Source of the DNA: Heteronotia binoei
Taxonomy: Eukaryota
Reading direction: 5' to 3'
Length of the DNA: 64,000 nucleotides
Assembly: GCF_032191835.1 (NCBI RefSeq)
Contig: NC_083223.1
Location: 100,192,001-100,256,000, forward strand
Below the pieces are notes generated by a model. It was not told the DNA's origin and searched no databases. It saw nothing but the letters and a program-made list of their open reading frames with translations. Positions within the stretch are counted from its first letter, which is position 1; each line of letters starts with the position of its first letter. The position numbers were made by a program, and so were the translations under genes. Shown here in pieces: positions 20,488-32,471 of the stretch.

Positions 20488-23024
20488 CTGTAGTTAAAAA
20501 AAACATTAACAGCAGAAAGTGAAGAAAAAAAAGAGAATGGTTAAAGCTCAATTTTTAAAAAAGCTTTGTGGCCAAATGAGAAGAAAATTAAATACTAAAA
20601 GTTGGAGTCTATGAAACACGATACCAAGAATTTGAAGAGGTGCTTTCCCCCTACCACCAGGAGACCAAGTACTAAATTTCAAGGGCAGTATTTATATATT
20701 TATTTATAACACTCTTAAACTGCTTTTATAATGCAAATGTAAAAAAGTTTTGTAGAACAAATGAAATGCTTTTAAAGACAAGGTGGGCATGCTGTAGACA
20801 TATACAGCTCTTAAATACAAGATGCATTTCTGCACCTACAAGAGTACCTGATCTTCATGCGGGAAACATGCAGGTCTTTCACTGCCTCTGTTGCCCTTTT
20901 TATCTGACTTGTCTCTTCTGGACAGATCAAAATGGGTAGCTGCATTAGTCTGTTTGAAGAAGTAGGAAAGAGTAAAAGCCTAGTAGCACCTTAAACTAAC
21001 AAAATTTGTGGTGGGGTATGACCTTTTCTCCAGGGTTGTGCACAGGGTCAGCACCAAGGTTTTTGGCACCCTAGACCAGACCCTCCCCCCACCCCTATTT
21101 TCCCGCCACCCATGCCCTTCCTTCCCGCCTCATGGCAGGCAAAGCTGGCCATAGCCCCGCCACTCCCCCACCCGTGCCTGCCCTGCCGCCCCTGCTCAGT
21201 TCCTTCCCCGCAGCCTGCCCATAGCAGTCCTAGTAGGCTATCAGGCATGATGGCAAGGCAGAGGAAGGCAGCAGAGAGGCAGACCTACAAGGTCACCTTC
21301 CGTAACTACAGAGCGAGCCAGTCTCTGTCAGCACTCACAACTTGCCCTGCAATATCAAGAACTTGTGGGTCACTGAGGCTTCTTTGGGAATTAGGCAAGG
21401 AACTTGTTCTGGAACATCCTACTTGGGAGTTGAAAACTGCTGTTACTGTCTTTGCATCACAAAGCATGAAAAGCAGTCAAAGACCCCCCCCCCCCCCCAG
21501 ACAGAGTGACTAGATGCTTGACCATCTCAGGGCATAATTATTGGGCGCCTTGGAGCCCCTCATTTGTCGCGCCTCCCCCCATCCCCATGAGGCACCACTC
21601 AAGAGCTCTTTCTCTCGAGACCTTCCGGGGTTGAAGCTTGGTGAGCTGACCTGTTTCCTTGTGTGGAGCAGACCAAGATCTTTGTTTTTGGACAGAAAAG
21701 GCTTTATAGAGCCTACTGTCTACTTTTTCCAGTAAAGGAACTTGTCTATGGCATGCATGTTTATTTCGAGGGGGATTCACTTTGGCTGATGAACGATCCC
21801 AGGAGGGTTTTTTTTTCGGCTTTGAAGATTCCCCCGATGAAGAATTGCATTCTATCGCCTATAAAGAATCCTTGGAGTCATTAAATTGACATAAACTCAC
21901 TAAGGCTTCAACTTCCTATGGACTATAACAACATCTGAGATAAAGTGGACGGTATTATGAGAGCTTAGACGTCGTTAATGAGGTAAAGATCCTTATCTGC
22001 TACTCCGGGTGTAATTTAAGCTTGTTAAAAGGAAAGATCTGGGACCCAGAACTATTTTTCAAAGTGGAAAATCAAGGAGAAGTGGAAGGGGGTAGAAGTG
22101 ATTTCTTTGGACTCAAAAGAAAGCAGAAAAGTACAGAAAAATACTTGCTGTTATGAATTCTTGTGGCTTCGGAAAAAAACCCCAGTCATAACAAAGCTGC
22201 AGACTCTTTCCTTAAAACAGGAAGTGACGTTTTCTGCAATCATTGAGAGACTTCAATGCTAGAGAGTCAGGAAGTAAGTGTGGAGAGAAGAGGAGCATCC
22301 AAGTATCCGGATACTTGCAAGAGTCAGTAACCATAGAGAAACATTGGAGGCCAGTTACAGAAAGGCCAAAATATTTTCACTAAATAACTTGAAAGTGGAC
22401 TATTAAAGGATTCAAAACATATATAAACAATCCCCTAAGGGCTAAATAACATGGACTATGTGCTTGAAAATGGAAAATAAGCCCTAGAGGGTAAAAGGAA
22501 AACTTTTTAAAAAGAGAGGCTTGGAACTTTAAAAATTAATATCTTGAGCTAGGAAGCTCTGAGGACGGCGTTTTTAGGCTTGTTGAAAAGGGCATGCTCT
22601 GTTCTGTTAAATCCAACTATCAGATTGGGGATTGAAGATACCAATTAAAAACCCATTATTTGTAATGGGCAGTCAGTAATGTCTGAGCAGAAGTTGGAAT
22701 CAAGAGTTACAAGGTTAAGAGCTGCCTCACTGGGAGAGGGTAAAATGTCTAAACAAGTTCATGAACAACTGGACGCTATGGAAGCGAGAATTTTGAAGGC
22801 AATGAGGGATTTAATAACTGGAAGTGAGAAGAAATTAACTAAGGAAATAAACTCCAGTGCTGAAGAGGTAAAGAAAGAATTTAAGAAGGAAATTGATGAC
22901 CTAAGGAAAGAGTCTCAAGCAATAGCTAAAAAGATAGATGATATAGAAGTGAAAATTAGAGATCAAGATGCCACCATTAAGAAAATGCAAGACAAAGCAA
23001 TACTACAAGACTGTAAGTTGATGG

Positions 23025-23504
23025 TGTTAGCATCAGGCACTTTAAGATGAAAACTGCTGATGCAACAGTATGTAACTCCAACTATACTAGCTAATGAGAG
23101 GCATGTGAAGCTAGTTAAGTGGGGTGTAACATGATTGGCCAGCTGCACCATAAGAACAAGGAACCCTAACTCTTAGTCTTTGTTGGGTTGATGAGGAGGA
23201 AGGACGTGTTGGAGAAGTGGAGAGCTATTGTTATCAGAGACTGTTACTCTGTCCGTTTGACTGATGATGGTAATGACCCTGGTATGTGTAGACTATTCTC
23301 TGGATTTGTGACTGTGTACTTCTGACCTGGATGAACTGAACTAACTGTGCTTTGACTATCTTGGACTGCCTTTAACTACTCTTTTGCTGTAACCCCAATA
23401 CAACTGTTTCAACCGGCTTACTGAAGTTGTGTCTTTGTAGACTTTCACTAGAGGCTGCACTTATCAGCATACTCATACTGCAGAACTCCCACGCACTACT
23501 GACA
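23025..23504 (+). repeat. Copia 5' LTR
   Basis: Matches the split 3' LTR except one 1-nt indel (GAACCCTAA versus GAACCTAA). Confidence 0.96.
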
Positions 23505-23506
23505 TC

Positions 23507-23521
23507 GGTTGTGGGCCCAGC
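23507..23521 (+). other. Copia PBS complementary to the internal (anticodon-arm) region of tRNAiMet
   Basis: GGTTGTGGGCCCAGC versus the copia-type GGTTATGGGCCCAGC (one G:U). Confidence 0.8.
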
Positions 23522-23630
23522 GTGGTCTGCGGGAGAGTGAGCTCTGTCTGCTGCAGCACTCGCCGGAAGTTCTACTCGTGAGTAAGGGAGCAGTTTGGGG
23601 CGTGGCACTTTGTTTGTGTTATAGGCAACA

Positions 23631-26600
23631 ATGGAGTCCAGTGTTCATATCTCTGGCTTCTTGATAAAGAGGCTTAATGGAGAGAATTTTGGGACATGGT
23701 CAGAGAAGGTCACCCTATTGTTAAAGTTCCAGGGGCTGTGGGAATACGTGCCAACTCCGCCAGACATAACCACGCTACATGCAGAGGATGATGCTGAGGT
23801 GATAGCAAAGCATAAGAGTAATGACGAGAAGGCGTTCGCATTACTTGGCTTGACCTTGGAAGATTCACAACTCATCCATATTAAAGGGGCGGACACAGCC
23901 AAGTCGTGCTGGGATGCACTAAAGGCAATATATGAGAGAGAAAGTGTTGGGTCACACATATTCTTAATGAAAAAGCTCTTATCCACACGTCTGGAGGCAG
24001 GTGGTGATATGATGACTCATCTTGAGCACATGACTCGTATGTTACACCAGCTGCAGGACAAAAAGGTAATTTTTACTCCCCTGCAGCAAGCCTACATAAT
24101 CCTATGTTCCCTGGACAGTACGTATGATCAATTTGTGGCCAACCTTGATATTGTTCCACAAGCTGAAATCACCGTGTCCAGCGTTACCCAACGCCTGTTG
24201 AATGAGGCTATGAGAAGGAAGGATGCAGCTCGATTCCATGAGGCTCCAGCCCATTCAACAATGAATGTGCCTGCCCGGGAGGTCTTTAAAGGGGCAGAGT
24301 GCAAGGCAGTAGTAGCAAAAACAAGTGCTGTGCGCAAGTGTTACTTGTGTGGAAGTCACAAGCACCTACAGCGTCAGTGTTGTTTGTACAAGAAGAAACA
24401 TTCTCCAGCTGTTACCAAAGGAGGTGGGTGCAATGTAATCATTAATGATTCCTCCTGCAGTAGCCAGCAATTTATGATTGACAGTGGTGCTACGGAGCAC
24501 ATTGCCAAGGACAGGAGGCTCTTTGAGACTTTTACTCCTACGCAAGGTCAGAGCATGAAGCTCGCAAACGGGCTGTCTGCCAATGTAGCTGGGAATGGTC
24601 TTATCAACATCCCGAGCCTGGGGAGAAAGTTCCTTATGCTCAATGTTCCAAGTCTGAATTATAATTTGTTATCAGTTTCGGCTTTGACTGAACAAAATTA
24701 TAAAGTTTGTTTTACAGCTACTGACTGCAATATATGTACAGAAGGAATTACTGCTAAAGCAAAAAGGAAAGGCGACCTCTATTTCCTGGAGAAGGAGGGA
24801 ACGGTACAGCATGTGAGTACTAATGAACCACTGCATGATAATTGCATATATCTCTGGCACCGCAGGCTGGGGCACCTTAATTTCCAGGCAGTGAAGAAGA
24901 CGCTTCAAGCGGCCGGAATTACTCCCAAGCCATGTGGGTGTTACATTGACTGTGAGGTATGCAAGGCTGTTAAGTCCAAAGCAACAGCCATGATATCTCC
25001 AAGCAACTTTCAGACCGATGACATACTTGATTTAGTGTTCATCGACCTGATAGGCCCGTTCCCAACGAGGAGTCTGGGCGGGGCAAAATATGCATTTTGT
25101 ATCGAAGACCATTTTTCTAGGTATGGTTTCTGCTTCCTTCTTAGGTCTAAGTCAGAAACATTCCATGCATTTCATAATTGGCTTCGCTCTGTGCACCGCA
25201 AGACAGGGAAATACCCTAAAACCATTCTGAGTGACAACGGTACTGAATTCTGCAACGAGAGAATGATTGCTTTGTGCAGGAGGCACGGCATTGAAAGAAA
25301 ATGTACAGCTCCTTACCGCCCCCAGCATAACGCTTTTTGCGAACGCAGAAACCAAACGCTAACCAATATGTGTATGAGCATGCTACAAGACAGCAATTTA
25401 CCTATGTGTTACTGGGGGGAGAGCATAATGTGTGCTTCTCATGTATTAAATTTGTCTTGGTCGTCAGCTACAGGTATGATTCCTGCAGAGGCATGGTACG
25501 GCAAGAAACCTTCCTTAGAGCACGTCAGGATATTTGGGATTCCAGCGTACGTCCACATCCCAAAGGAGCTCAGGAGGAAAGGGAAAAACAAAGCTAAAAA
25601 ATTGTTGTTTGTTGGTTATTCTAACAATCATCGAGCTTTCAGGTTTTGCCATGCTGGAGAGAAAAAGATAACGACTAGCGCATTGGCTAGCTTTCTTGAA
25701 AAATCTGTTGGCTGGCAACAAACGTCCTCAACTCTGATCATTCCGACAGTAGTGAAACAAGAGCCGCTACCCGTTCCTCGGAGGGGGAGGAGGAGCCCGT
25801 CGCTCAGCAACGGAGGCATCAAGGAAGAACCGTTAACTCCTACATTCCCAGGAGCTGGTGTTTCTCTGCAGCCTGAGATGGCAACACAACAGACAGTGTC
25901 TGATGAAGCTGTAGAACCAATTCTTCGGAGGTCCACTCGAGAAACGAGGCCACCAGATCGCTACAGCCCAGGACAGACATGCGCTGTGGTTGCTGAACCC
26001 TCGAGTTATGAGAGTATACAGCATCTATCAACAGATGAGCAGGCTGGATGGCGCGCTGCAATGAAGTCTGAGCTAGAGTCCCTGCAAAGCCAGCAAGTCT
26101 ATGAAGAAACGACTCTACCTATCGGTCAGAGACTCATTGGGTGTAAATGGGTGTTTAAGCTGAAGTCTGGCATAGATGGTACTACTCAGTACAAGGCCAG
26201 ACTTGTAGCCCAAGGTTTTTTACAGGGGGGGCAAGACTATGACGAAACCTTTGCCCCTACTCTAAAGGCTACATCACTGTATTGCGCTCTTACTATTGCA
26301 GCCAAACAGAAATGTTTAGTCAGGCATCTTGATGTGAAAACAGCCTACTTGCACGCACCACTGAGGCACTGTATATATATGCAAAAACCACCAGGTGTCT
26401 CAGATGATGATGATAATGCTAATACTTGTTGGTTGCTTAAGAAATCCTTGTATGGATTAAAGCAGTCTGGATTCGAATGGAACCAGCATTTGGTAGATAA
26501 CCTTAAAATGTTGGGTTATAAGCAAGGCGTTGCAGATCCCTGTGTGTTCACGAAGGGAACAGGGGAGCAACGTTCTATCATATTAGTGTTTGTTCATGAT

Positions 26601-27527
26601 CTGGCACTAATATGTAAATCTGCCAAAGTAATGAGTGATACTATTGATGCTCTAAAATCTAAATTTACTGTAAGAGATCTAGGAGAGATCAAGCAATATG
26701 TTGGATTGGAAATTGCAAAAGTAAATGATGGATACAGAGTATCACAGAGGGCAAAAATATCCCATTTGCTAAAACAGTTCAAGATGGAACAATGCAAAGG
26801 GGTACAAAATCCCATGCTACCAGGTAATGAATCTGACTGTGAACAGAGTCCACTGTTCGATCAAGGAATATACCAATCCCTGATTGGAAGTCTGTCATAT
26901 CTCGCAAATTGGTCCAGGCCGGACATAGCCATGGCCACTAACGTTTTGGCTAGAGCTGTTAAAGATCCTAGGCAAAAGCACTGGCTAGCAGCCAAGCATA
27001 TATTAAGATACCTAAAGCAAACCATAGACTTAAGTTTATTCATAACACCTACTGGTGAACTTACTATGTACGCCTATGCAGATGCTAGTTTTGCAAATGA
27101 TCCTAAAACTAGGCAATCTACAACAGGAATGGCTATCTTTCTGGGTGGCACCCTAATTGGGTGGAGATCACTAAAGCAGAAATACGTGTCTCTGTCCACC
27201 TGCGAGGCAGAATACGCAGCATTAAGCGCAGTGTGTACTGAAATCATATGGTTCAAGCAACTGTTAGATTTTGGTATATGTCATATGAATCCCATCATTG
27301 TGAGGGAAGACAATCAGGCAGCTATCCAGTTAGCAACCTCTCATGGAGTCAAGAGTAGATCTAAACATACAGATGTACGCTTTCATAATGTTAAGCAATG
27401 TTTAGAGGACAAACTGATAGTGCTGGAGTACTGTGAAACTAATGCTAATATCGCAGACTTGTTTACCAAGATTCAAACCCATGTAAAGCACAAGGAAAGT
27501 TGTATATCTTTGGGTCTTAGAAAATGA
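23631..27527 (+). CDS. pol: Copia gag-pol polyprotein (1298 aa), uninterrupted; RT motif FVHD
   Basis: CCHC knuckle, DSGAT protease, HHCC and DDE integrase, RT LDVKTAY and LYGLKQSG, RH YADAS/EAEY/DNQAA/ADLFTK. Confidence 0.95.
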   Translation: MESSVHISGFLIKRLNGENFGTWSEKVTLLLKFQGLWEYVPTPPDITTLHAEDDAEVIAKHKSNDEKAFALLGLTLEDSQLIHIKGADTAKSCWDALKAIYERESVGSHIFLMKKLLSTRLEAGGDMMTHLEHMTRMLHQLQDKKVIFTPLQQAYIILCSLDSTYDQFVANLDIVPQAEITVSSVTQRLLNEAMRRKDAARFHEAPAHSTMNVPAREVFKGAECKAVVAKTSAVRKCYLCGSHKHLQRQCCLYKKKHSPAVTKGGGCNVIINDSSCSSQQFMIDSGATEHIAKDRRLFETFTPTQGQSMKLANGLSANVAGNGLINIPSLGRKFLMLNVPSLNYNLLSVSALTEQNYKVCFTATDCNICTEGITAKAKRKGDLYFLEKEGTVQHVSTNEPLHDNCIYLWHRRLGHLNFQAVKKTLQAAGITPKPCGCYIDCEVCKAVKSKATAMISPSNFQTDDILDLVFIDLIGPFPTRSLGGAKYAFCIEDHFSRYGFCFLLRSKSETFHAFHNWLRSVHRKTGKYPKTILSDNGTEFCNERMIALCRRHGIERKCTAPYRPQHNAFCERRNQTLTNMCMSMLQDSNLPMCYWGESIMCASHVLNLSWSSATGMIPAEAWYGKKPSLEHVRIFGIPAYVHIPKELRRKGKNKAKKLLFVGYSNNHRAFRFCHAGEKKITTSALASFLEKSVGWQQTSSTLIIPTVVKQEPLPVPRRGRRSPSLSNGGIKEEPLTPTFPGAGVSLQPEMATQQTVSDEAVEPILRRSTRETRPPDRYSPGQTCAVVAEPSSYESIQHLSTDEQAGWRAAMKSELESLQSQQVYEETTLPIGQRLIGCKWVFKLKSGIDGTTQYKARLVAQGFLQGGQDYDETFAPTLKATSLYCALTIAAKQKCLVRHLDVKTAYLHAPLRHCIYMQKPPGVSDDDDNANTCWLLKKSLYGLKQSGFEWNQHLVDNLKMLGYKQGVADPCVFTKGTGEQRSIILVFVHDLALICKSAKVMSDTIDALKSKFTVRDLGEIKQYVGLEIAKVNDGYRVSQRAKISHLLKQFKMEQCKGVQNPMLPGNESDCEQSPLFDQGIYQSLIGSLSYLANWSRPDIAMATNVLARAVKDPRQKHWLAAKHILRYLKQTIDLSLFITPTGELTMYAYADASFANDPKTRQSTTGMAIFLGGTLIGWRSLKQKYVSLSTCEAEYAALSAVCTEIIWFKQLLDFGICHMNPIIVREDNQAAIQLATSHGVKSRSKHTDVRFHNVKQCLEDKLIVLEYCETNANIADLFTKIQTHVKHKESCISLGLRK

Positions 27528-27605
27528 AACAGTAAAGTCATGCTGTATGAATGTTAAAAATGAAATGTTTTATGGTGACAAAATGTATAGTCCATGTCGT
27601 TACAC

Positions 27606-27615
27606 AAGGGGAGGA
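27606..27615 (+). other. Copia polypurine tract
   Basis: AAGGGGAGGA abuts the 3' LTR TG at 27616. Confidence 0.85.
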
Positions 27616-27735
27616 TGTTAGCATCAGGCACTTTAAGATGAAAACTGCTGATGCAACAGTATGTAACTCCAACTATACTAGCTAATGAGAGGCATGTGAA
27701 GCTAGTTAAGTGGGGTGTAACATGATTGGGGGTGT

Positions 27736-27944
27736 GGGGGGTGTGGGCTCCCTCTGGGAATCCTACCCCCCCAGGGAAAGTGCATGCGCAATACATAGCC
27801 TCTCCTCTCCCGGTGTAGTGAACGCCGCGTGGTCACTGTCTGGCTATGCCTGGCAGATGGTCACTGCAATGGCCTCTCCTGCATTACTGCATCCGTAGCA
27901 ACACCTTCTCGCTGGTCCCCCCCGTTTTCACAGAGTTTGCTACG
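27736..27944 (+). ncRNA. Candidate HDV/CPEB3-like self-cleaving ribozyme at the RTE 5' end
   Basis: P1 G6 (27736-41) with C7 (27917-23). P2 CGTAGCAAC with GTTTGCTACG. P3 ACC/GGT. L3 TTCTCGCT. J4/2 CAGA. Built by hand, not folded computationally. Confidence 0.65.
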
Positions 27945-28116
27945 TCATGGTGCGACCGAATTGTCCGGCGGTATAACCGGATGGGCAGGCTGGGCCCACC
28001 AACTTCGTCAGCCTAAGAGAAGGAAAACTCTAACATCAAACCCGGGCAGATAGAGCTCGTTAATGTAACACCTACCACCTGGAGGACTCACTGCCGGCGT
28101 CCCGGCTTACTGGGCC

Positions 28117-28440
28117 ATGGCAGATGACCCCCAGGTGAAAGGGTGGAGCCAGTACCGCGCACACTGCGCATCACCTAAAAAATTCCTCTGCGCAGGCCTG
28201 AAGGGCATATCCACACACACAACCCACAACGCATCAAGTCCTGCAGCGATAGGCAAGGGGCGAAACGGCAGGTGGAAGGTGCCACTGGAAGCCGCAGTCC
28301 CGATCCTGCATGTAGGCGGTTCAGGATATTGGTCGCCTGATGCTAACCCGGAGACGAAAGCATCTTTCGGCAGCACCCTGAACGACCAAGCAGCCTTATC
28401 TAGGGACAGCACTGCTTGCTCCACACGGAGAGGGGCCTAG
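28117..28440 (+). CDS. RTE short upstream ORF (107 aa), function unknown
   Basis: ATG-initiated ORF in the 5' region. Beyond its TAG the frame stays open to 28527 and overlaps the ORF2 frame. Confidence 0.35.
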   Translation: MADDPQVKGWSQYRAHCASPKKFLCAGLKGISTHTTHNASSPAAIGKGRNGRWKVPLEAAVPILHVGGSGYWSPDANPETKASFGSTLNDQAALSRDSTACSTRRGA

Positions 28441-28487
28441 AAAAGGTGGCCTAAACAAAGCTCGTCTCCCCCACCCCAGTTGGCTAG

Positions 28488-31400
28488 CCGCGGTCAACGG
28501 GCATCCTTACTTGCGGTCGAAAAATAACAACAAAGAAAAGGCATGCACCTGCCTCACAAAGTGTGCAAAGACTAAAGCTTGCGTGTTGGAACATCAGAAC
28601 CATGCTTGACACAGTAGACAGTGGTCGCCCTGAACGACGCTCTGCTCTAGTTGCCCATGAACTTCTCAGGTTGAATATCGACATAGCAGCTCTCAGTGAG
28701 GTCCGTTTCCCTGAGGAAGGTAGTCTTCAAGAACACGGTGCTGGCTATACCCTCTACTGGTCGGGTAAGTCAAAGGCTGAGAGCCGCCTTTCTGGCATTG
28801 GCTTCATGGTCAGGAACTCCATTGCCTCCAAACTCGAAAACCTTCCAACAGGTCACTCAGATCGCATCATGTCCATGCGCCTCCCACTTCAAAACAAGCA
28901 GCATGCAACACTCTTCAGTGTGTATGCCCCAACCCTTCAAGCAGATCCTGCAGAAAAGAACAAGTTCTATGCTGATCTACGCAACCTCGTACGGAAGACC
29001 CCTACAGAGGACAAGGTGATCATCCTTGGCGACTTCAATGCCAGAGTAGGTAAAGACTCGGAAGCCTGGAAAGGAGTACTTGGCAAACACGGCATTGGCA
29101 ACTGCAATGACAACGGGCGCCTCCTGCTAGAATTCTGCATGGAGCACCAGCTCACCATCACCAACACTATCTTCCAGCAGAAGAACAGACTGAAGACAAC
29201 CCGGATGCACCCACGGTCCAAGCATTGGCACCTTATCGACTACATTCTGGTGCGCCAGAGAGACCTTCGAGATGTCTTACACACCCGAGTAATGCCCAGC
29301 GCAGAATGTCATACGGATCATCGTCTTGTACGCTGCAATCTCCGTCTTCACTTTAAACCCACACCCAGGAGAGGAGGTATCCCTCGGAGGAAGTTTCAGG
29401 TTGGCAGCCTCCAGTCAGCCGAAGTTAAAGCTGCCTTCCAGGCAAAACTCCAGTCAAGAATTGAGGACCTCAGTTGCCCCACAGACCCTTCTCCAGAAGC
29501 ACTCTGGGAACACCTAAAAACTACCGTCCTGCAGATCTCTGAAGAAGTCCTCGGGTTCTCCACAAGGAAGAACAAGGACTGGTTTGATGAGAACAATCAA
29601 GAGATCCAAGAATTACTGGCGAAAAAGAGATCTGCCTACCAAGCACATCTTGCTCAGCCCTCCTGTCCTGGGAAAAAAGCAACCTTTCGCGCTGCATGTA
29701 GCAACCTCCAGCGCAAGCTTCGAGACATTCAGAACGAGTGGTGGACCAAGCTTGCAGAGAGAACCCAGCTGTGTGCAGACACTGGTGATTTAAGAGGGTT
29801 CTACGAAGCCCTGAAGGCAGTATATGGTCCATCATATCAGGCTCAGAGTCCCTTGCATAGTGCAGACGGCCAAGTGCTCCTCACAGACAAGGCATCCATA
29901 CTGAACCGGTGGTCGGAGTATTTTCAGGTTCTCTTCAGTGCCAACCGCGTAGTTCAAGATTCAGCAATCCACCTCACCCCACTTCAACCGGTGAAAACAG
30001 AGTTGGATGAGATCCCCACCCTAGAAGAGACTGTTAAAGCCATCAAGCAACTGAAAAGTGGCAAGGCAGCAGGAGTTGATGGAATTCCACCAGAGATCTG
30101 GAAGCATGGGGGCACAGTACTACATAGCTCACTTCACAAAGTACTTGTCACCTGCTGGGAACAAGGCAAATTACCACAGGACTTTCGCGATGCAATCATC
30201 ATCACCCTATACAAGAACAAAGGGGAAAAGTCAGACTGCTCCAACTACCGGGGGATAACCCTGCTCTCCATCGCAGGCAAAATCCTTGCCAGAATACTCC
30301 TGAACAGACTGGTGCCCACCATTGCAGAAGAACTCCTCCCAGAGAGCCAGTGCGGCTTCAGAGCTAACAGGAGCACCACCGACATGGTATTTGTTCTCAG
30401 GCAGCTCCAAGAGAAATGCAGGGAACAGAACAAGGGTCTGTATGTGACTTTTGTCGACCTTACCAAAGCTTTCGATACCGTTAGCAGGAAAGGCCTGTGG
30501 CAAATCTTGGAACGTTTAGGATGTCCCCCAAGGTTCCTCAGCATGATCATCCAGCTACACGAAGACCAGCGAGGCCAAGTCAGACACTGCAACGACCTCT
30601 CGGAGTCCTTCCCAATAGGCACAGGTGTAAAGCACGGCTGCGTTCTCGCGCCAACTCTCTTTACGATCTTCTTTAGCATGATGCTTCAAAGAGCCGCAGT
30701 AGATCTAGATGAGGACGATGGTGTCTACATCCGCTATCGCACCGATGGCAGCCTGTTCAACCTGAGGCGACTAAAGGCACACTCCAAGACAATGGAAAAA
30801 CTCATCCGAGAGCTACTGTTTGCTGATGATGCTGCACTCGTCTCCCACTCGGTATCAGCTCTGCAGCATATGACGTCCTGCTTTGCAGAGGCTGCCAAGC
30901 TATTCGGCCTAGAAGTTAGTCTGAAGAAGACAGAAGTTCTCCACCAGCCTGCACCCCAGGAAGATTATCACCCTCCCTGCATCACTGTGGGTGAATCAGT
31001 TCTGAAGACAGTCCAGCAGTTCAGCTACCTGGGGTGCATCATCTCCTCAGATGCCAAGATCGACAAGGAGATTGACAACAGGCTGGCAAAGGCAAACCGT
31101 GCATTTGGCCGACTGCACAAAAGAGTGTGGAGCAACAAGCATCTGAAAAAAGGCACAAAGATCAATGTTTACAAAGCGGTTGTGATGACAACCCTCATCT
31201 ATGGCTCCGAATCGTGGGTTTTATACCGTCATCACCTGCGACTCCTTGAGCGCTTTCATCAGCGCTGCCTTCGCACCATCCTCAACATCCACTGGAGTGA
31301 CTTTGTGACCAACACTGAAGTCCTCAAGCGGGCAGAGGTTACCAGCATCGAGGCACTGCTTTTGAAGACGCAGCTGCGCTGGGCAGGGCATATTTCTAGG

Positions 31401-31787
31401 ATGGAAAACCACCGCCTTCCCAAGATTGCCCTGTATGGCGAACTCTCCACCGGCCATCGAAATAGAGGGGCACCAAAGAAGAGGTACAAGGACTCCTTGA
31501 AGAAATCCCTTAGCACCTGTCACATCAACCATCACCAGTGGTCTGACCTAGCCTCAGATCGCAAAGCATGGAGGCACACCATCCACCAGGCTGTCTCTTC
31601 CTTTGAGAACACATGCATAGCTGGTCTTGAGGACAAAAGGAGATTGAGGAAGAATCGCACTGCTACAGGACCAACCCTAAATCAGACTTTTCCCTGCAGC
31701 CGCTGTGGCCGGACCTGCCTGTCCCACATTGGTCTTGTCAGCCACCAGCGAGCCTGCAGCAAACGTGGACTATTGCACCCTTCTTAA
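28488..31787 (+). CDS. RTE ORF2: APE endonuclease, RT and C-terminal CxxC..HxxxC motif; intact, no AUG before APE motif I
   Basis: WNIRT, LSEVR, VYAPT, LGDFNAR, TDH. RT NYRGITLL, DLTKAFD, FADD. C-terminal CSRCGRTCLSHIGLVSHQRAC. The frame opens after the TAG at 28485-28487; the track start at 28563 is GTG. Confidence 0.93.
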   Translation, partial: PRSTGILTCGRKITTKKRHAPASQSVQRLKLACWNIRTMLDTVDSGRPERRSALVAHELLRLNIDIAALSEVRFPEEGSLQEHGAGYTLYWSGKSKAESRLSGIGFMVRNSIASKLENLPTGHSDRIMSMRLPLQNKQHATLFSVYAPTLQADPAEKNKFYADLRNLVRKTPTEDKVIILGDFNARVGKDSEAWKGVLGKHGIGNCNDNGRLLLEFCMEHQLTITNTIFQQKNRLKTTRMHPRSKHWHLIDYILVRQRDLRDVLHTRVMPSAECHTDHRLVRCNLRLHFKPTPRRGGIPRRKFQVGSLQSAEVKAAFQAKLQSRIEDLSCPTDPSPEALWEHLKTTVLQISEEVLGFSTRKNKDWFDENNQEIQELLAKKRSAYQAHLAQPSCPGKKATFRAACSNLQRKLRDIQNEWWTKLAERTQLCADTGDLRGFYEALKAVYGPSYQAQSPLHSADGQVLLTDKASILNRWSEYFQVLFSANRVVQDSAIHLTPLQPVKTELDEIPTLEETVKAIKQLKSGKAAGVDGIPPEIWKHGGTVLHSSLHKVLVTCWEQGKLPQDFRDAIIITLYKNKGEKSDCSNYRGITLLSIAGKILARILLNRLVPTIAEELLPESQCGFRANRSTTDMVFVLRQLQEKCREQNKGLYVTFVDLTKAFDTVSRKGLWQILERLGCPPRFLSMIIQLHEDQRGQVRHCNDLSESFPIGTGVKHGCVLAPTLFTIFFSMMLQRAAVDLDEDDGVYIRYRTDGSLFNLRRLKAHSKTMEKLIRELLFADDAALVSHSVSALQHMTSCFAEAAKLFGLEVSLKKTEVLHQPAPQEDYHPPCITVGESVLKTVQQFSYLGCIISSDAKIDKEIDNRLAKANRAFGRLHKRVWSNKHLKKGTKINVYKAVVMTTLIYGSESWVLYRHHLRLLERFHQRCLRTILNIHWSDFVTNTEVLKRAEVTSIEALLLKTQLRWAGHISRMENHRLPKIALYGELSTGHRNRGAPKKRYKDSLKKSLSTCHINHHQWSDLASDRKAWRHTIHQAVSSFENTCIAGLEDKRRLRKNRTATGPTLNQTFPCSRCGRTCLSHIGLVSHQRACSKRGLLHPS

Positions 31788-32471
31788 ATCTTCGTTCGCG
31801 AAGCCAAGCCGAGAGAGAGAACATGATTGGCCAGCTGCACCATAAGAACAAGGAACCTAACTCTTAGTCTTTGTTGGGTTGATGAGGAGGAAGGACGTGT
31901 TGGAGAAGTGGAGAGCTATTGTTATCAGAGACTGTTACTCTGTCCGTTTGACTGATGATGGTAATGACCCTGGTATGTGTAGACTATTCTCTGGATTTGT
32001 GACTGTGTACTTCTGACCTGGATGAACTGAACTAACTGTGCTTTGACTATCTTGGACTGCCTTTAACTACTCTTTTGCTGTAACCCCAATACAACTGTTT
32101 CAACCGGCTTACTGAAGTTGTGTCTTTGTAGACTTTCACTAGAGGCTGCACTTATCAGCATACTCATACTGCAGAACTCCCACGCACTACTGACAGATGG
32201 AGAACATGATTCGGCTAAGAGGAGTGCCTGAGAATGAACAAGAGGATGTGAAGAGTCATATTGTCACAATTATAGCTGAATTTTTGGAAGAAGATCCGGA
32301 GGAGATGGAGCGTTTATGCGACTATGCATATAGAGTCAATTCAGAATTTGCCAGAAAGCGCAAACTACGCAGGGGTGTAGTAGTGAAGTTTACCAGGAGA
32401 GACATGGTGGGAAGGATCTTAAGCAAGCAATTTGAAACCCCAATGGTGAGGGAGGAAAGCAGAGTACGAAT

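What the first reader, a model, noticed from the sequence alone, without database searches (positions are those of the whole stretch)
27736..27944. HDV/CPEB3-like self-cleaving ribozyme at the 5' end of a squamate RTE LINE
Seen: every core element of the nested double pseudoknot, in the right order. P1 is GGGGGG(T) 27736-42 with CCCCCCC 27917-23 (6 bp plus one mismatch). J1/2 is ~150 nt. P2 is CGTAGCAAC 27894-902 with GTTTGCTACG 27935-44 (one bulged U). P3 is ACC 27903-05 with GGT 27914-16. L3 is TTCTCGCT, 7/8 identical to HDV genomic UCCUCGCU and keeping the U20/G25 pair. GT follows P1', giving a single-bp P1.1 as in CPEB3. J4/2 is CAGA, placing the catalytic C at 27931. P4 is reduced to ~5 nt. 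The predicted cleavage site lies 6 nt inside the TSD-defined 5' boundary, and those 6 nt (GGGTGT) look like a slippage duplication. Established: HDV-like ribozymes process the 5' ends of R2 and RTE-clade elements. Inference: this copy or its family consensus self-cleaves to define the transcript 5' end. The P4-less, long-J1/2 variant would be unusual.
Basis: partly seen in the sequence, partly recalled or inferred. Interest (0 to 1): 0.8.

Follow-up and report, generated by a model that had tools for sequence, protein, structure and literature searches.

The report
HDV-like ribozyme heading a reptile LINE
The first 209 bases of a young, intact RTE-type jumping gene fold like a hepatitis-delta-type self-cutting RNA that has lost one helix, and related elements in aquatic animals carry the complete version at the same spot, so this is a real but already known kind of ribozyme whose cutting has not been tested.

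Summary
The element is a 4090-bp RTE LINE (27730-31819) with an intact APE+RT ORF and an 11-bp TSD, sitting in the 3' LTR of a Copia element.

Helices this loose occur by chance about 1.6 times per window, and Rfam finds nothing. Rfam also misses the clear relatives, so its silence carries no weight.

The case rests on relatives:
- An RTE from a metagenome (L004, 80% ORF identity) shares the 27775-27980 block at 82%. It has the same P4-less fold, and every one of the 8 core differences sits in a loop or bulge or keeps a pair. These include G1-C to G1.U and G7-C to U7.G in P1.
- Four more distant RTEs (L022, L025, L029, L032) carry textbook HDV-like ribozymes in the 5' UTR upstream of ORF2. They have long J1/2, GG P1.1, a 5-bp P4 and CUAA, and their P1, P2 and P3 sequences covary.
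- Other copies in RNA libraries read G at 27742, which makes P1 a perfect 7 bp.

HDV-like ribozymes are published for RTE elements. P4-less, long-J1/2 forms are known in silkmoth R2 and abalone. This is therefore a new member of a known kind. Catalysis is untested, and RNA-seq showed no 5'-end pile-up. First readers of this scan flagged the same motif at two other RTE copies of this genome.

The parts
27719..27729 (+). Left target-site duplication AACATGATTGG, part of the Copia 3' LTR.
   Evidence: Identical 11-mer at 31820-30. It occurs once at the empty site 23128-38 in the 5' LTR.
27730..31819 (+). Full-length RTE-clade LINE, 4090 bp, ending in (GA)n.
   Evidence: Bounded by the TSD. ORF 28563-31787 has Exo_endo_phos and RVT_1 domains.
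27730..27735 (+). Six extra 5' letters GGGTGT between the TSD and the predicted cleavage site. They repeat 27739-44.
   Evidence: Other copies join their flanks at 27734 and 27738 (table 7).
27736..27742 (+). P1 5' strand GGGGGGU. The predicted cleavage is 5' of G27736.
   Evidence: Pairs with 27917-23. Nearly all other copies read G at 27742, giving 7 of 7 pairs (table 3). L004 has GGGGGGU against GCCCCCU.
27743..27893 (+). J1/2, 151 nt. Its 3' part, 27812-27893, forms a stem-loop domain closed by a 10-bp helix that abuts P2.
   Evidence: 82% identical to L004 from 27775 onwards. The helix is predicted in both sequences with compatible changes. The motif ACATAGCCUCUCC is also present in the J1/2 of L025.
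27894..27902 (+). P2 5' strand CGUAGCAAC.
   Evidence: Pairs with 27935-44 and appears in the MFE fold. The common variant A27897G gives G.U with U27941.
27903..27905 (+). P3 5' strand ACC.
   Evidence: Pairs with GGU 27914-16. Across the relatives this helix reads AU/GC and CG/GC.
27906..27913 (+). L3 UUCUCGCU, holding U20, C22, C24 and G25.
   Evidence: Fits the published fixed L3 residues U..CG (PMC6326823). The relatives read UUCCCGU, UCCACGC, UCCUCGU and UCCCCGU.
27914..27916 (+). P3 3' strand GGU.
27917..27923 (+). P1 3' strand CCCCCCC.
   Evidence: L004 reads GCCCCCU here, and both changes keep the pairing with its own 5' strand.
27924..27925 (+). P1.1 strand GU. G pairs with C27908 of L3, and U faces U27907.
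   Evidence: CPEB3 has the same arrangement of one G-C plus one U-U pair (PMC4836649).
27926..27930 (+). Five-nucleotide linker UUUCA where P4 would be.
   Evidence: Canonical relatives have a 5-bp P4 here. Many copies carry an extra T after 27924, so its length is free to vary (table 4).
27931..27934 (+). J4/2 CAGA with the predicted catalytic C27931.
   Evidence: Fits the C-R-R-A descriptor (PMC6326823). The C lies 4 nt before P2', as does the C of CUAA in L022 and L025 and the C of CUGA in L004.
27935..27944 (+). P2 3' strand GUUUGCUACG, with one bulged U.
   Evidence: In L004 the bulged U is a C, which changes no pair.
28563..31787 (+). RTE ORF2 (AP endonuclease plus reverse transcriptase), open over 1074 codons.
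31820..31830 (+). Right target-site duplication.
23015..32155 (+). Host Copia-type LTR retrotransposon in the same orientation. 5' LTR 23015-23464, ORF 23631-27527, and a 3' LTR split by the RTE into 27606-27729 and 31820-32155.

Best explanation
Bases 27736-27944 are an HDV-like (CPEB3-type) self-cleaving ribozyme at the 5' end of a young RTE LINE. It is a derived form of the canonical ribozyme that this RTE clade carries. It has lost P4 (5 nt remain), it has a one-pair P1.1 (C-G plus U.U), and it keeps a long, conserved J1/2 of 151 nt.

Inferred mechanism: the LINE is transcribed by read-through from upstream, here from the Copia element whose 3' LTR it sits in. The nested double pseudoknot then folds (P1 with 27917-23, P2 with 27935-44, P3/L3, P1.1). 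C27931 acts as the general acid, and the RNA cuts itself 5' of G27736. This releases a LINE RNA with a 5'-OH whose first letters are the G run, which then serves as the template for retrotransposition. The fold may also help translation of the uncapped RNA.

Shown here: the fold, its homology, its covariation across relatives, and its position at the element boundary. Inferred: the cleavage itself, the read-through transcription, and any role in translation.
For: 1. All elements are present in the right order. They fit a published HDV-like descriptor: G1-Y, L3 U..CG, J4/2 C-R-R-A (PMC6326823).
2. L004, an RTE with 80% ORF2 identity, shares the block 27775-27980 at 82%, while the 5' UTR stretches on either side of that block do not align. 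It has the same P4-less fold. All 6 substitutions and 2 indels in the 51-nt core fall in loops or bulges or keep pairs, including G1-C to G1.U and G7-C to U7.G in P1. Random substitutions keep every pair in only 0.2-5% of trials.
3. L022, L025, L029 and L032 have canonical HDV-like ribozymes 0.5-1 kb upstream of ORF2. They show 7 of 7 P1 pairs, J1/2 of 97-179 nt, GG P1.1, a 5-bp P4 and CUAA. Their P1, P2 and P3 sequences are quite different but complementary.
4. L029 and L032 become alignable exactly at G1 of P1.
5. In RNA-library contigs and reads, nearly all other copies have G at 27742, which gives a perfect 7-bp P1. The common A27897G change gives G.U. The length change falls in the P4-replacing linker. 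Other copies join unrelated flanks at 27734 and 27738.
6. Precedent: HDV-like ribozymes are known at RTE 5' ends (PMC6765202, PMC3774820). P4-less, long-J1/2 R2 ribozymes self-cleave, and a C-to-U change abolishes cleavage (PMC3774820). CPEB3 has the same P1.1 (PMC4836649).
Against: - No cleavage assay has been done.
- Raw RNA-seq (X21, X22; depth about 10-25, unstranded) shows no pile-up of read starts at 27736. In X22, 19 reads of a divergent subfamily run about 30 nt upstream of the G run.
- This lineage departs from its canonical relatives in three ways at once: no P4, a single P1.1 pair, and G instead of A at J4/2 position 3. P4-less silkmoth ribozymes are weak, at 10-40% cleavage, and very low in B. 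mori (PMC3774820).
- This copy has U x C at P1 pair 7. A nearby C run (27766-72) can trap the 5' G run in an alternative hairpin, which is the MFE fold.
- The whole J1/2 is as conserved as the core, so the constraint could lie elsewhere, for example on a promoter or a protein-binding site.
- Only two lineages carry the P4-less form.
- Rfam gives no hit, but it also misses the canonical relatives.
Confidence: 0.62

Rival explanations
1. Decayed or repurposed relic. The sequence descends from the clade's HDV-like ribozyme but no longer cleaves usefully after losing P4 and one P1.1 pair. It would be kept as a structured 5' UTR, serving as a binding site for the element's protein, an IRES-like fold, or part of an internal promoter that sets the 5' end at the G run.
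For: - Three departures from the canonical relatives in the catalytic neighbourhood.
- J1/2 and the downstream hairpin 27964-81 are as conserved as the core.
- No pile-up of RNA 5' ends, and some reads cross the site.
- R2 protein is reported to bind a pseudoknot within its ribozyme, and these folds are proposed to act as IRESs (PMC6765202).
Against: - The residues needed only for catalysis are kept in both lineages: C27931, A27934, U20, G25 and the G1-Y pair.
- P1, which pairs the extreme 5' end with the core, is maintained by a change on both strands.
- Natural P4-less and single-P1.1 ribozymes are active (PMC3774820, PMC4836649).
Confidence: 0.28
2. Chance look-alike. The G run, the C run and a 9-bp helix happen to mimic the HDV topology in an ordinary LINE 5' UTR.
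For: - Equally loose helices occur about 1.6 times per shuffled window. One comparable hit lies antisense inside the RTE ORF itself.
- Runs of G and C pair trivially.
- Rfam is silent.
Against: - With the L3 pattern added, the expectation falls to about 0.03 per window, and the hit begins 6 nt from a TSD-defined LINE end.
- The fold is kept in L004 through 8 differences.
- Canonical ribozymes sit in the 5' UTR upstream of ORF2 in four relatives.
Confidence: 0.04
3. The family's ribozyme is active but this copy is crippled. U27742 gives a U x C mismatch in P1, and the extra GGGTGT together with the 27766-72 C run favour a competing hairpin.
For: - 27742 is G in nearly all other copies.
- The MFE fold pairs 27736-41 with 27767-72 instead of forming P1.
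Against: - Six G-C pairs of P1 remain.
- The alternative C run lies in a stretch where the laid copies vary (27759-27765), so a competing hairpin there may not be peculiar to this copy.
- The copy is young, with an intact ORF and a perfect TSD, so it came from an active source.
Confidence: 0.25

Closest known systems
HDV-like ribozymes at the 5' ends of RTE-clade and other non-LTR retrotransposons (the drz-Agam-2 family, R2, R4, L1Tc, Baggins; Webb 2009 and Ruminski 2011, as cited in PMC6765202, PMC3774820 and PMC4908430)
   Same: - Nested double pseudoknot forming the first roughly 200 nt of the element.
- Cleavage site at or next to the element's 5' junction.
- Long J1/2 insert.
- Host element lacks its own upstream promoter and lies downstream of an LTR element.
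   Different: - No P4, and a single C-G pair in P1.1.
- Found in a reptile genome, in an RTE lineage whose nearest relatives are in aquatic animals.
- Activity has not been measured.
Silkmoth (Bombycoidea) R2 ribozymes, and the abalone HDV-like ribozyme with 5 nt in place of P4 (PMC3774820)
   Same: - P4 is absent.
- J1/2 is very long, and part of it is needed for activity in silkmoths.
- Only the catalytic C and one A are conserved in L4-J4/2.
   Different: - Different LINE clade (R2, specific to rDNA).
- The silkmoth P1 5' strand comes from 28S rRNA and cleavage is upstream of the junction. Here P1 is element sequence and J1/2 is 151 nt.
Mammalian CPEB3 ribozyme (PMC4836649)
   Same: - P1.1 made of one G-C pair plus one U-U pair.
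   Different: It is not part of a mobile element.
Canonical ribozymes of the sister RTEs found here (L022, L025, L029, L032)
   Same: - Same order of elements and the same place in the 5' UTR.
- Long J1/2, with the shared motif ACAUAGCCUCUCC in L025.
- L3 reads U-Y-C-N-C-G.
- The catalytic C lies 4 nt before P2'.
   Different: They have GG P1.1, a 5-bp P4 and J4/2 CUAA. The window and L004 have GU, no P4, and CAGA or CUGA.

Membership tests
HDV-like self-cleaving ribozymes | Nested double-pseudoknot order: P1, J1/2, P2, P3, L3, P3', P1', P1.1, (P4), J4/2, P2'. | tested here: met
   Coordinates checked. The same order is found by my descriptor in the window and in 4 relatives, and by hand in L004.
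HDV-like self-cleaving ribozymes | Cleavage-site pair G1-Y at the base of a 6-7 bp P1. | tested here: met
   G27736-C27923 here. G.U in L004, L025, L029 and L032, and G-C in L022. The published descriptor allows G1-Y (PMC6326823). P1 is 6 bp plus U x C in this copy and 7 bp in most other copies.
HDV-like self-cleaving ribozymes | 3-bp P3 closing a 7-8 nt L3 with U20, C24 and G25. | tested here: met
   ACC / UUCUCGCU / GGU.
HDV-like self-cleaving ribozymes | P1.1 of two C-G pairs between L3 and the two nucleotides after P1'. | tested here: inconclusive
   Only C27908-G27924 forms, and U27907 faces U27925. CPEB3, an active member, has the same arrangement (PMC4836649). The feature is reduced rather than absent.
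HDV-like self-cleaving ribozymes | J4/2 with the catalytic C followed by R-R-A, directly before P2'. | tested here: met
   CAGA 27931-34. L004 reads CUGA and the canonical relatives read CUAA. Descriptor from PMC6326823.
HDV-like self-cleaving ribozymes | P4 helix stacked under P1.1. | tested here: not met
   Only UUUCA lies between P1.1 and J4/2. P4 is reported to be dispensable for activity and is absent in active silkmoth R2 ribozymes (PMC3774820), so it is not strictly defining.
HDV-like self-cleaving ribozymes | Helices supported by covariation. | tested here: met
   - Across 6 sequences, P1 shows GC, GU, UA and AU at 6 of 7 positions.
- P3 shows AU/GC and CG/GC.
- The P2 strands are unrelated in sequence but complementary.
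- Within the P4-less pair only P1 positions 1 and 7 change, and both changes keep the pair.
HDV-like self-cleaving ribozymes | Site-specific, divalent-ion-dependent self-scission giving a 5'-OH at G1, abolished by C75U. | not testable with these tools
   RNA-seq laid on the stretch gave no decisive 5'-end signal.
Ribozyme-terminated non-LTR retrotransposons | The element's 5' junction coincides with the ribozyme's cleavage site across copies that have different flanks. | tested here: met
   - L029 and L032 become alike exactly at G1.
- In the window family the junctions lie at 27730 (this copy), 27734 and 27738, against a predicted 27736, all within a G-rich run.
- First-reader notes report the same at two other copies (unchecked).
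Rfam HDV-type families (I did not list which HDV-type models the Rfam release holds) | Covariance-model match. | tested here: not met
   No hit at the gathering score or at E up to 10. The same search misses the canonical L022, L025, L029 and L032 ribozymes. The likely reason is that the models do not allow a 100-180 nt J1/2, so the test is uninformative.

The most novel reading that the evidence does not exclude
The window and L004 lineage is a natural minimal-core HDV-like ribozyme in which the large, conserved J1/2 domain has taken over the stabilising role of the lost P4. This would parallel the unexplained 35-nt J1/2 requirement in silkmoth R2. The conserved part runs from 27775 to 27893, including the 27812-27893 stem-loop abutting P2. 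On this reading the ribozyme travelled with a horizontally spreading aquatic RTE into a reptile, where it is still processing transcripts of an expanding family.
Probability: 0.3. Interest if true: 0.6.

Novelty: new member of a known kind. Interest (0 to 1): 0.45.

Why it matters
- It would add a vertebrate (reptile) RTE family, together with a wider set of aquatic-animal RTEs, to the retrotransposons that define their RNA 5' end with an HDV-like ribozyme.
- It offers a naturally conserved P4-less, single-P1.1 core next to canonical sister forms. That is a ready-made comparative series for asking what P4 and the J1/2 domain contribute to folding and rate.
- Standard covariance-model scans miss every member found here. 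Long-J1/2 HDV-like ribozymes are therefore probably under-counted in animal genomes.
- For genome annotation, the motif marks true full-length 5' ends of this LINE family.

Tried and rejected
- Rfam at the gathering score over the whole window and at E up to 10 over 27650-28050 gave nothing. This was rejected as evidence once the canonical relatives also gave nothing.
- A search of the window for a second copy of the core found none.
- Exact-pattern scans for two conserved 23-24-mers of the block gave no hits. The first pattern was scanned in genome contigs and viral contigs, the second in viral contigs only.
- The protein route to closer copies failed. The best ORF2 relatives are only 80% identical, and the small upstream ORF 28117-28440 has two weak relatives.
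- Contigs for P0003 and P0076 had no DNA available.
- L001-L003, L005 and L086-L090 share the 5' UTR only from about window 28063 onwards and lack the ribozyme block. The Branchiostoma lanceolatum locus L001 matches only about 75 nt next to the ORF start.
- MAFFT could not align the 3' halves of the six cores. Pairs were therefore counted by component in a script, and no covariance model was built.
- RNA-seq 5'-end mapping gave no pile-up at 27736 at depth about 10-25 with unstranded libraries. This is uninformative rather than negative.
- I considered that P4 might be the conserved hairpin 27964-81. This was rejected because no P2' complement follows it.
- I considered an alternative P1 register starting at G27734 with G.U and U.G pairs. 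This was rejected because no G would then follow P1' to form P1.1.
- I considered that the block might be protein-coding. This was rejected because every frame has 3-8 stops in both sequences.

Full report
**What is there.** The surrounding element is well defined.
- A Copia-type LTR retrotransposon has a 1298-codon gag-pol ORF at 23631-27527 and a 5' LTR at 23015-23464.
- Its 3' LTR is split into 27606-27729 and 31820-32155.
- The split is caused by a 4090-bp insert, 27730-31819, flanked by the 11-bp duplication AACATGATTGG. That 11-mer is present once at the matching place of the 5' LTR.
- The insert carries one long ORF, 28563-31787, with AP-endonuclease and reverse-transcriptase domains. 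It ends in (GA)n. It is a full-length, young RTE-clade LINE in the same orientation as the Copia element.
- The proposed P1 starts 6 nt inside this boundary.

**Is the motif more than chance?** On its own, barely.
- With P2 of at least 9 bp, it finds 2 cores in the real window and 1.6 on average in dinucleotide shuffles.
- One real hit is an obvious false positive, antisense inside the RTE ORF.
- Requiring L3 to read U[CU]CNCG lowers the chance rate to about 0.03 per window.
- Rfam finds nothing at the gathering score or at E up to 10.

**Relatives decide the matter.** ORF2's closest proteins are only 80% identical. They come from marine and other metagenomes, amphioxus, carp, shrimps and a sea urchin. 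I fetched 90 related loci. Most share the window's 5' UTR only from about 28063 onwards.

One of them, L004 (80% ORF2 identity), also shares 27775-27980 at 82% identity, while the 5' UTR stretches on either side of that block do not align. L004 has the same architecture:
- P1 GGGGGGU 67-73 against GCCCCCU 249-255
- P2 CGUAGCCAAC against GCUUGCUACG
- P3 ACC against GGU
- L3 UUCCCGU
- then GU, UCUCA, CUGA

The 51-nt cores differ by 6 substitutions and 2 indels. None breaks a pair or touches U20, G25, the catalytic C or the last A of J4/2.
- Two of the substitutions lie in the P1 3' strand, and both keep pairing with L004's own 5' strand. G1-C becomes G1.U, the classical HDV wobble. Pair 7 is U.G, where most copies of the window's family have G-C.
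- In simulations, random substitutions keep all pairs and core residues in 0.2-5% of trials. This figure is post hoc and should be read as modest support.

**Canonical ribozymes in the same clade.** The descriptor, run over all loci, finds textbook HDV-like ribozymes in the 5' UTRs of L022, L025, L029 and L032.
- P1 is perfect at 7 bp: GGGGUAU/AUACCCC, GUGUGUG/CACACAU and GGUGGUG/CACCACU.
- J1/2 is 97-179 nt.
- L3 reads UCCACGC, UCCUCGU and UCCCCGU.
- P1.1 is GG, P4 is a 5-bp hairpin, and J4/2 is CUAA directly before P2'.
- P1, P2 and P3 differ in sequence between lineages but stay complementary. That is covariation at the level of the clade.
- L029 and L032 have unrelated upstream DNA and become alignable exactly at G1 of P1. 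This is the signature of a ribozyme-defined element end.
- L025's J1/2 shares the motif ACAUAGCCUCUCC with the J1/2 of the window and L004, which ties the two forms together.
- Rfam misses all of these, so its silence on the window means nothing.

The window's motif is therefore a derived member of this lineage. It has lost P4, changed the second P1.1 pair to U.U, and reads CAGA (CUGA in L004) instead of CUAA.

**Other copies of the same family.** Reads and contigs from four RNA libraries of two coded species were laid on 27450-28650.
- The family is abundant there.
- Nearly all other copies read G at 27742, so the family's P1 is GGGGGGG against CCCCCCC, a perfect 7 bp.
- The common A27897G change gives G.U with U27941 in P2.
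- A frequent extra T falls in the linker that replaces P4.
- Among the listed substitutions, 9 lie in 27742-27826, 1 in 27827-27962, and then about 1 per 21 nt. This is soft evidence, because 62 rows were not shown.
- Two contigs join unrelated flanks to the element at 27734 and 27738. Full-length copies therefore begin within a few letters of the predicted site.
- First readers of this scan flagged the same motif at the 5' ends of two other RTE copies of this genome. I did not check those notes.

**What the RNA data do not show.** The two raw-read RNA-seq runs are unstranded and cover the region only 10-25-fold. No pile-up of starts appears at 27736. In one run, 19 reads of a divergent subfamily run about 30 nt upstream of the G run. 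Standard RNA-seq is poor at 5' ends, and many copies lie inside other transcripts. I read this as uninformative, but it is not support.

**Folding.**
- The MFE of 27736-27946 contains P2 and a J1/2 stem-loop domain, 27812-27893, closed by a 10-bp helix that abuts P2.
- That helix is predicted in L004 too, with compatible one-sided changes.
- In this copy the 5' G run can also pair with a nearby C run (27766-72). This is a competing hairpin, and L004 lacks the C run.
- L022's J1/2 folds as a closed domain with its ends paired, like the P1.2 'pinch' described for drz-Agam-2-1 (PMC4908430).

**Comparison with what is known.**
- HDV-like ribozymes are published at the 5' ends of RTE, R2, R4, L1Tc and Baggins elements. 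The RTE and Baggins elements are described as lacking promoters and being transcribed from introns or from just downstream of LTR retrotransposons (PMC6765202; PMC3774820 citing Ruminski 2011, a paper I could not open). That situation matches this window.
- P4 is reported to be dispensable. Silkmoth R2 ribozymes have no P4 and a J1/2 of 216-498 nt. They cleave at 10-40%, lose activity with C-to-U, and need part of J1/2. An abalone ribozyme has 5 nt in place of P4 (PMC3774820).
- CPEB3 has the same G-C plus U-U P1.1 (PMC4836649).
- A published descriptor fixes G1-Y, L3 U..CG and J4/2 C-R-R-A (PMC6326823). The window meets all three.
- Each unusual feature therefore has an active precedent, although I did not find all three combined in one published ribozyme.

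**Verdict.**
- About 0.9, my own judgement: this is a homologue of the clade's HDV-like ribozyme.
- About 0.6: the P4-less family still self-cleaves.
- Somewhat less for this particular copy, because of U27742 and the competing hairpin.
- It is a new member of a known kind and not a new class.
- Its interest is moderate. It is a clean natural series from canonical to P4-less cores, in an RTE lineage spread among aquatic animals and present in a reptile, and it is invisible to standard Rfam scans.

Noticed in passing
window 23015-32155: A seemingly intact Copia-type LTR retrotransposon: a 1298-codon gag-protease-integrase-RT ORF and LTR segments 97-100% identical. RNA reads that bridge the empty LTR site (loose ends at 27729 reading CCAGCTGCACC...) show that other copies without the RTE insert are present in RNA libraries.
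   Followed up: partly
window 28563-31787: The closest proteins to the RTE ORF2 are at most 80% identical. They come from marine metagenomes, Branchiostoma, carp, shrimps and a sea urchin, and none is from a reptile. This fits a horizontally acquired aquatic RTE, like the RTE-Snek and RTE-Kret elements of sea snakes (PMC7846101, which does not mention ribozymes). I tested neither identity with those named families nor the species.
   Followed up: partly
L086:209-500, L087:50-343, L012:496-796, L017:191-491, L006:1200-1489, L041:1196-1490, L016:1221-1496: Many sister RTEs carry a different conserved 5' module. It begins, after unrelated flanks, with GTCAGGTCAGGT. It holds a 6-bp hairpin (UACUGG...CCAGUA) whose loop contains ACCUG, complementary to the terminal CAGGU, so a pseudoknot is possible. 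It contains CUAA but does not fit the HDV order. It may be another 5'-end structure.
   Followed up: partly
window 27964-27981: A conserved hairpin just downstream of the ribozyme: UCCGG, an 8-nt loop CGGUAUAA, then CCGGA. In L004 the closing U-A is C-G (both sides changed) and one G-C is G.U. Its function is unknown.
   Followed up: partly
L025:1-90; L029:195-207; window 27730-27747: The 5' ends of these elements carry short tandem repeats of the P1 sequence itself: (GT)n blocks in L025, (GGT)n in L029 and L032, and GGGTGT twice here. This may reflect slippage or template jumping when the 5' end is copied.
   Followed up: no
window 28117-28440: A 107-codon ATG ORF in the RTE 5' UTR has only two weak relatives: 74% identity over 47% of its length in P0121, upstream of another RTE, and 43% in P0122. 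It has no Pfam match. It could be a short ORF1 or could be open by chance.
   Followed up: partly
window 27984-28060; L003:1-165: An approximately 80-nt 5' UTR module (GGCAGGC..UUCGUC..AAGGAAAA..AAACCC..GGGCAGAU.GAGCUCGU) lies between the ribozyme block and the widely shared 5' UTR. It is tandemly duplicated in L003. The 5' UTRs of this RTE clade look modular.
   Followed up: no
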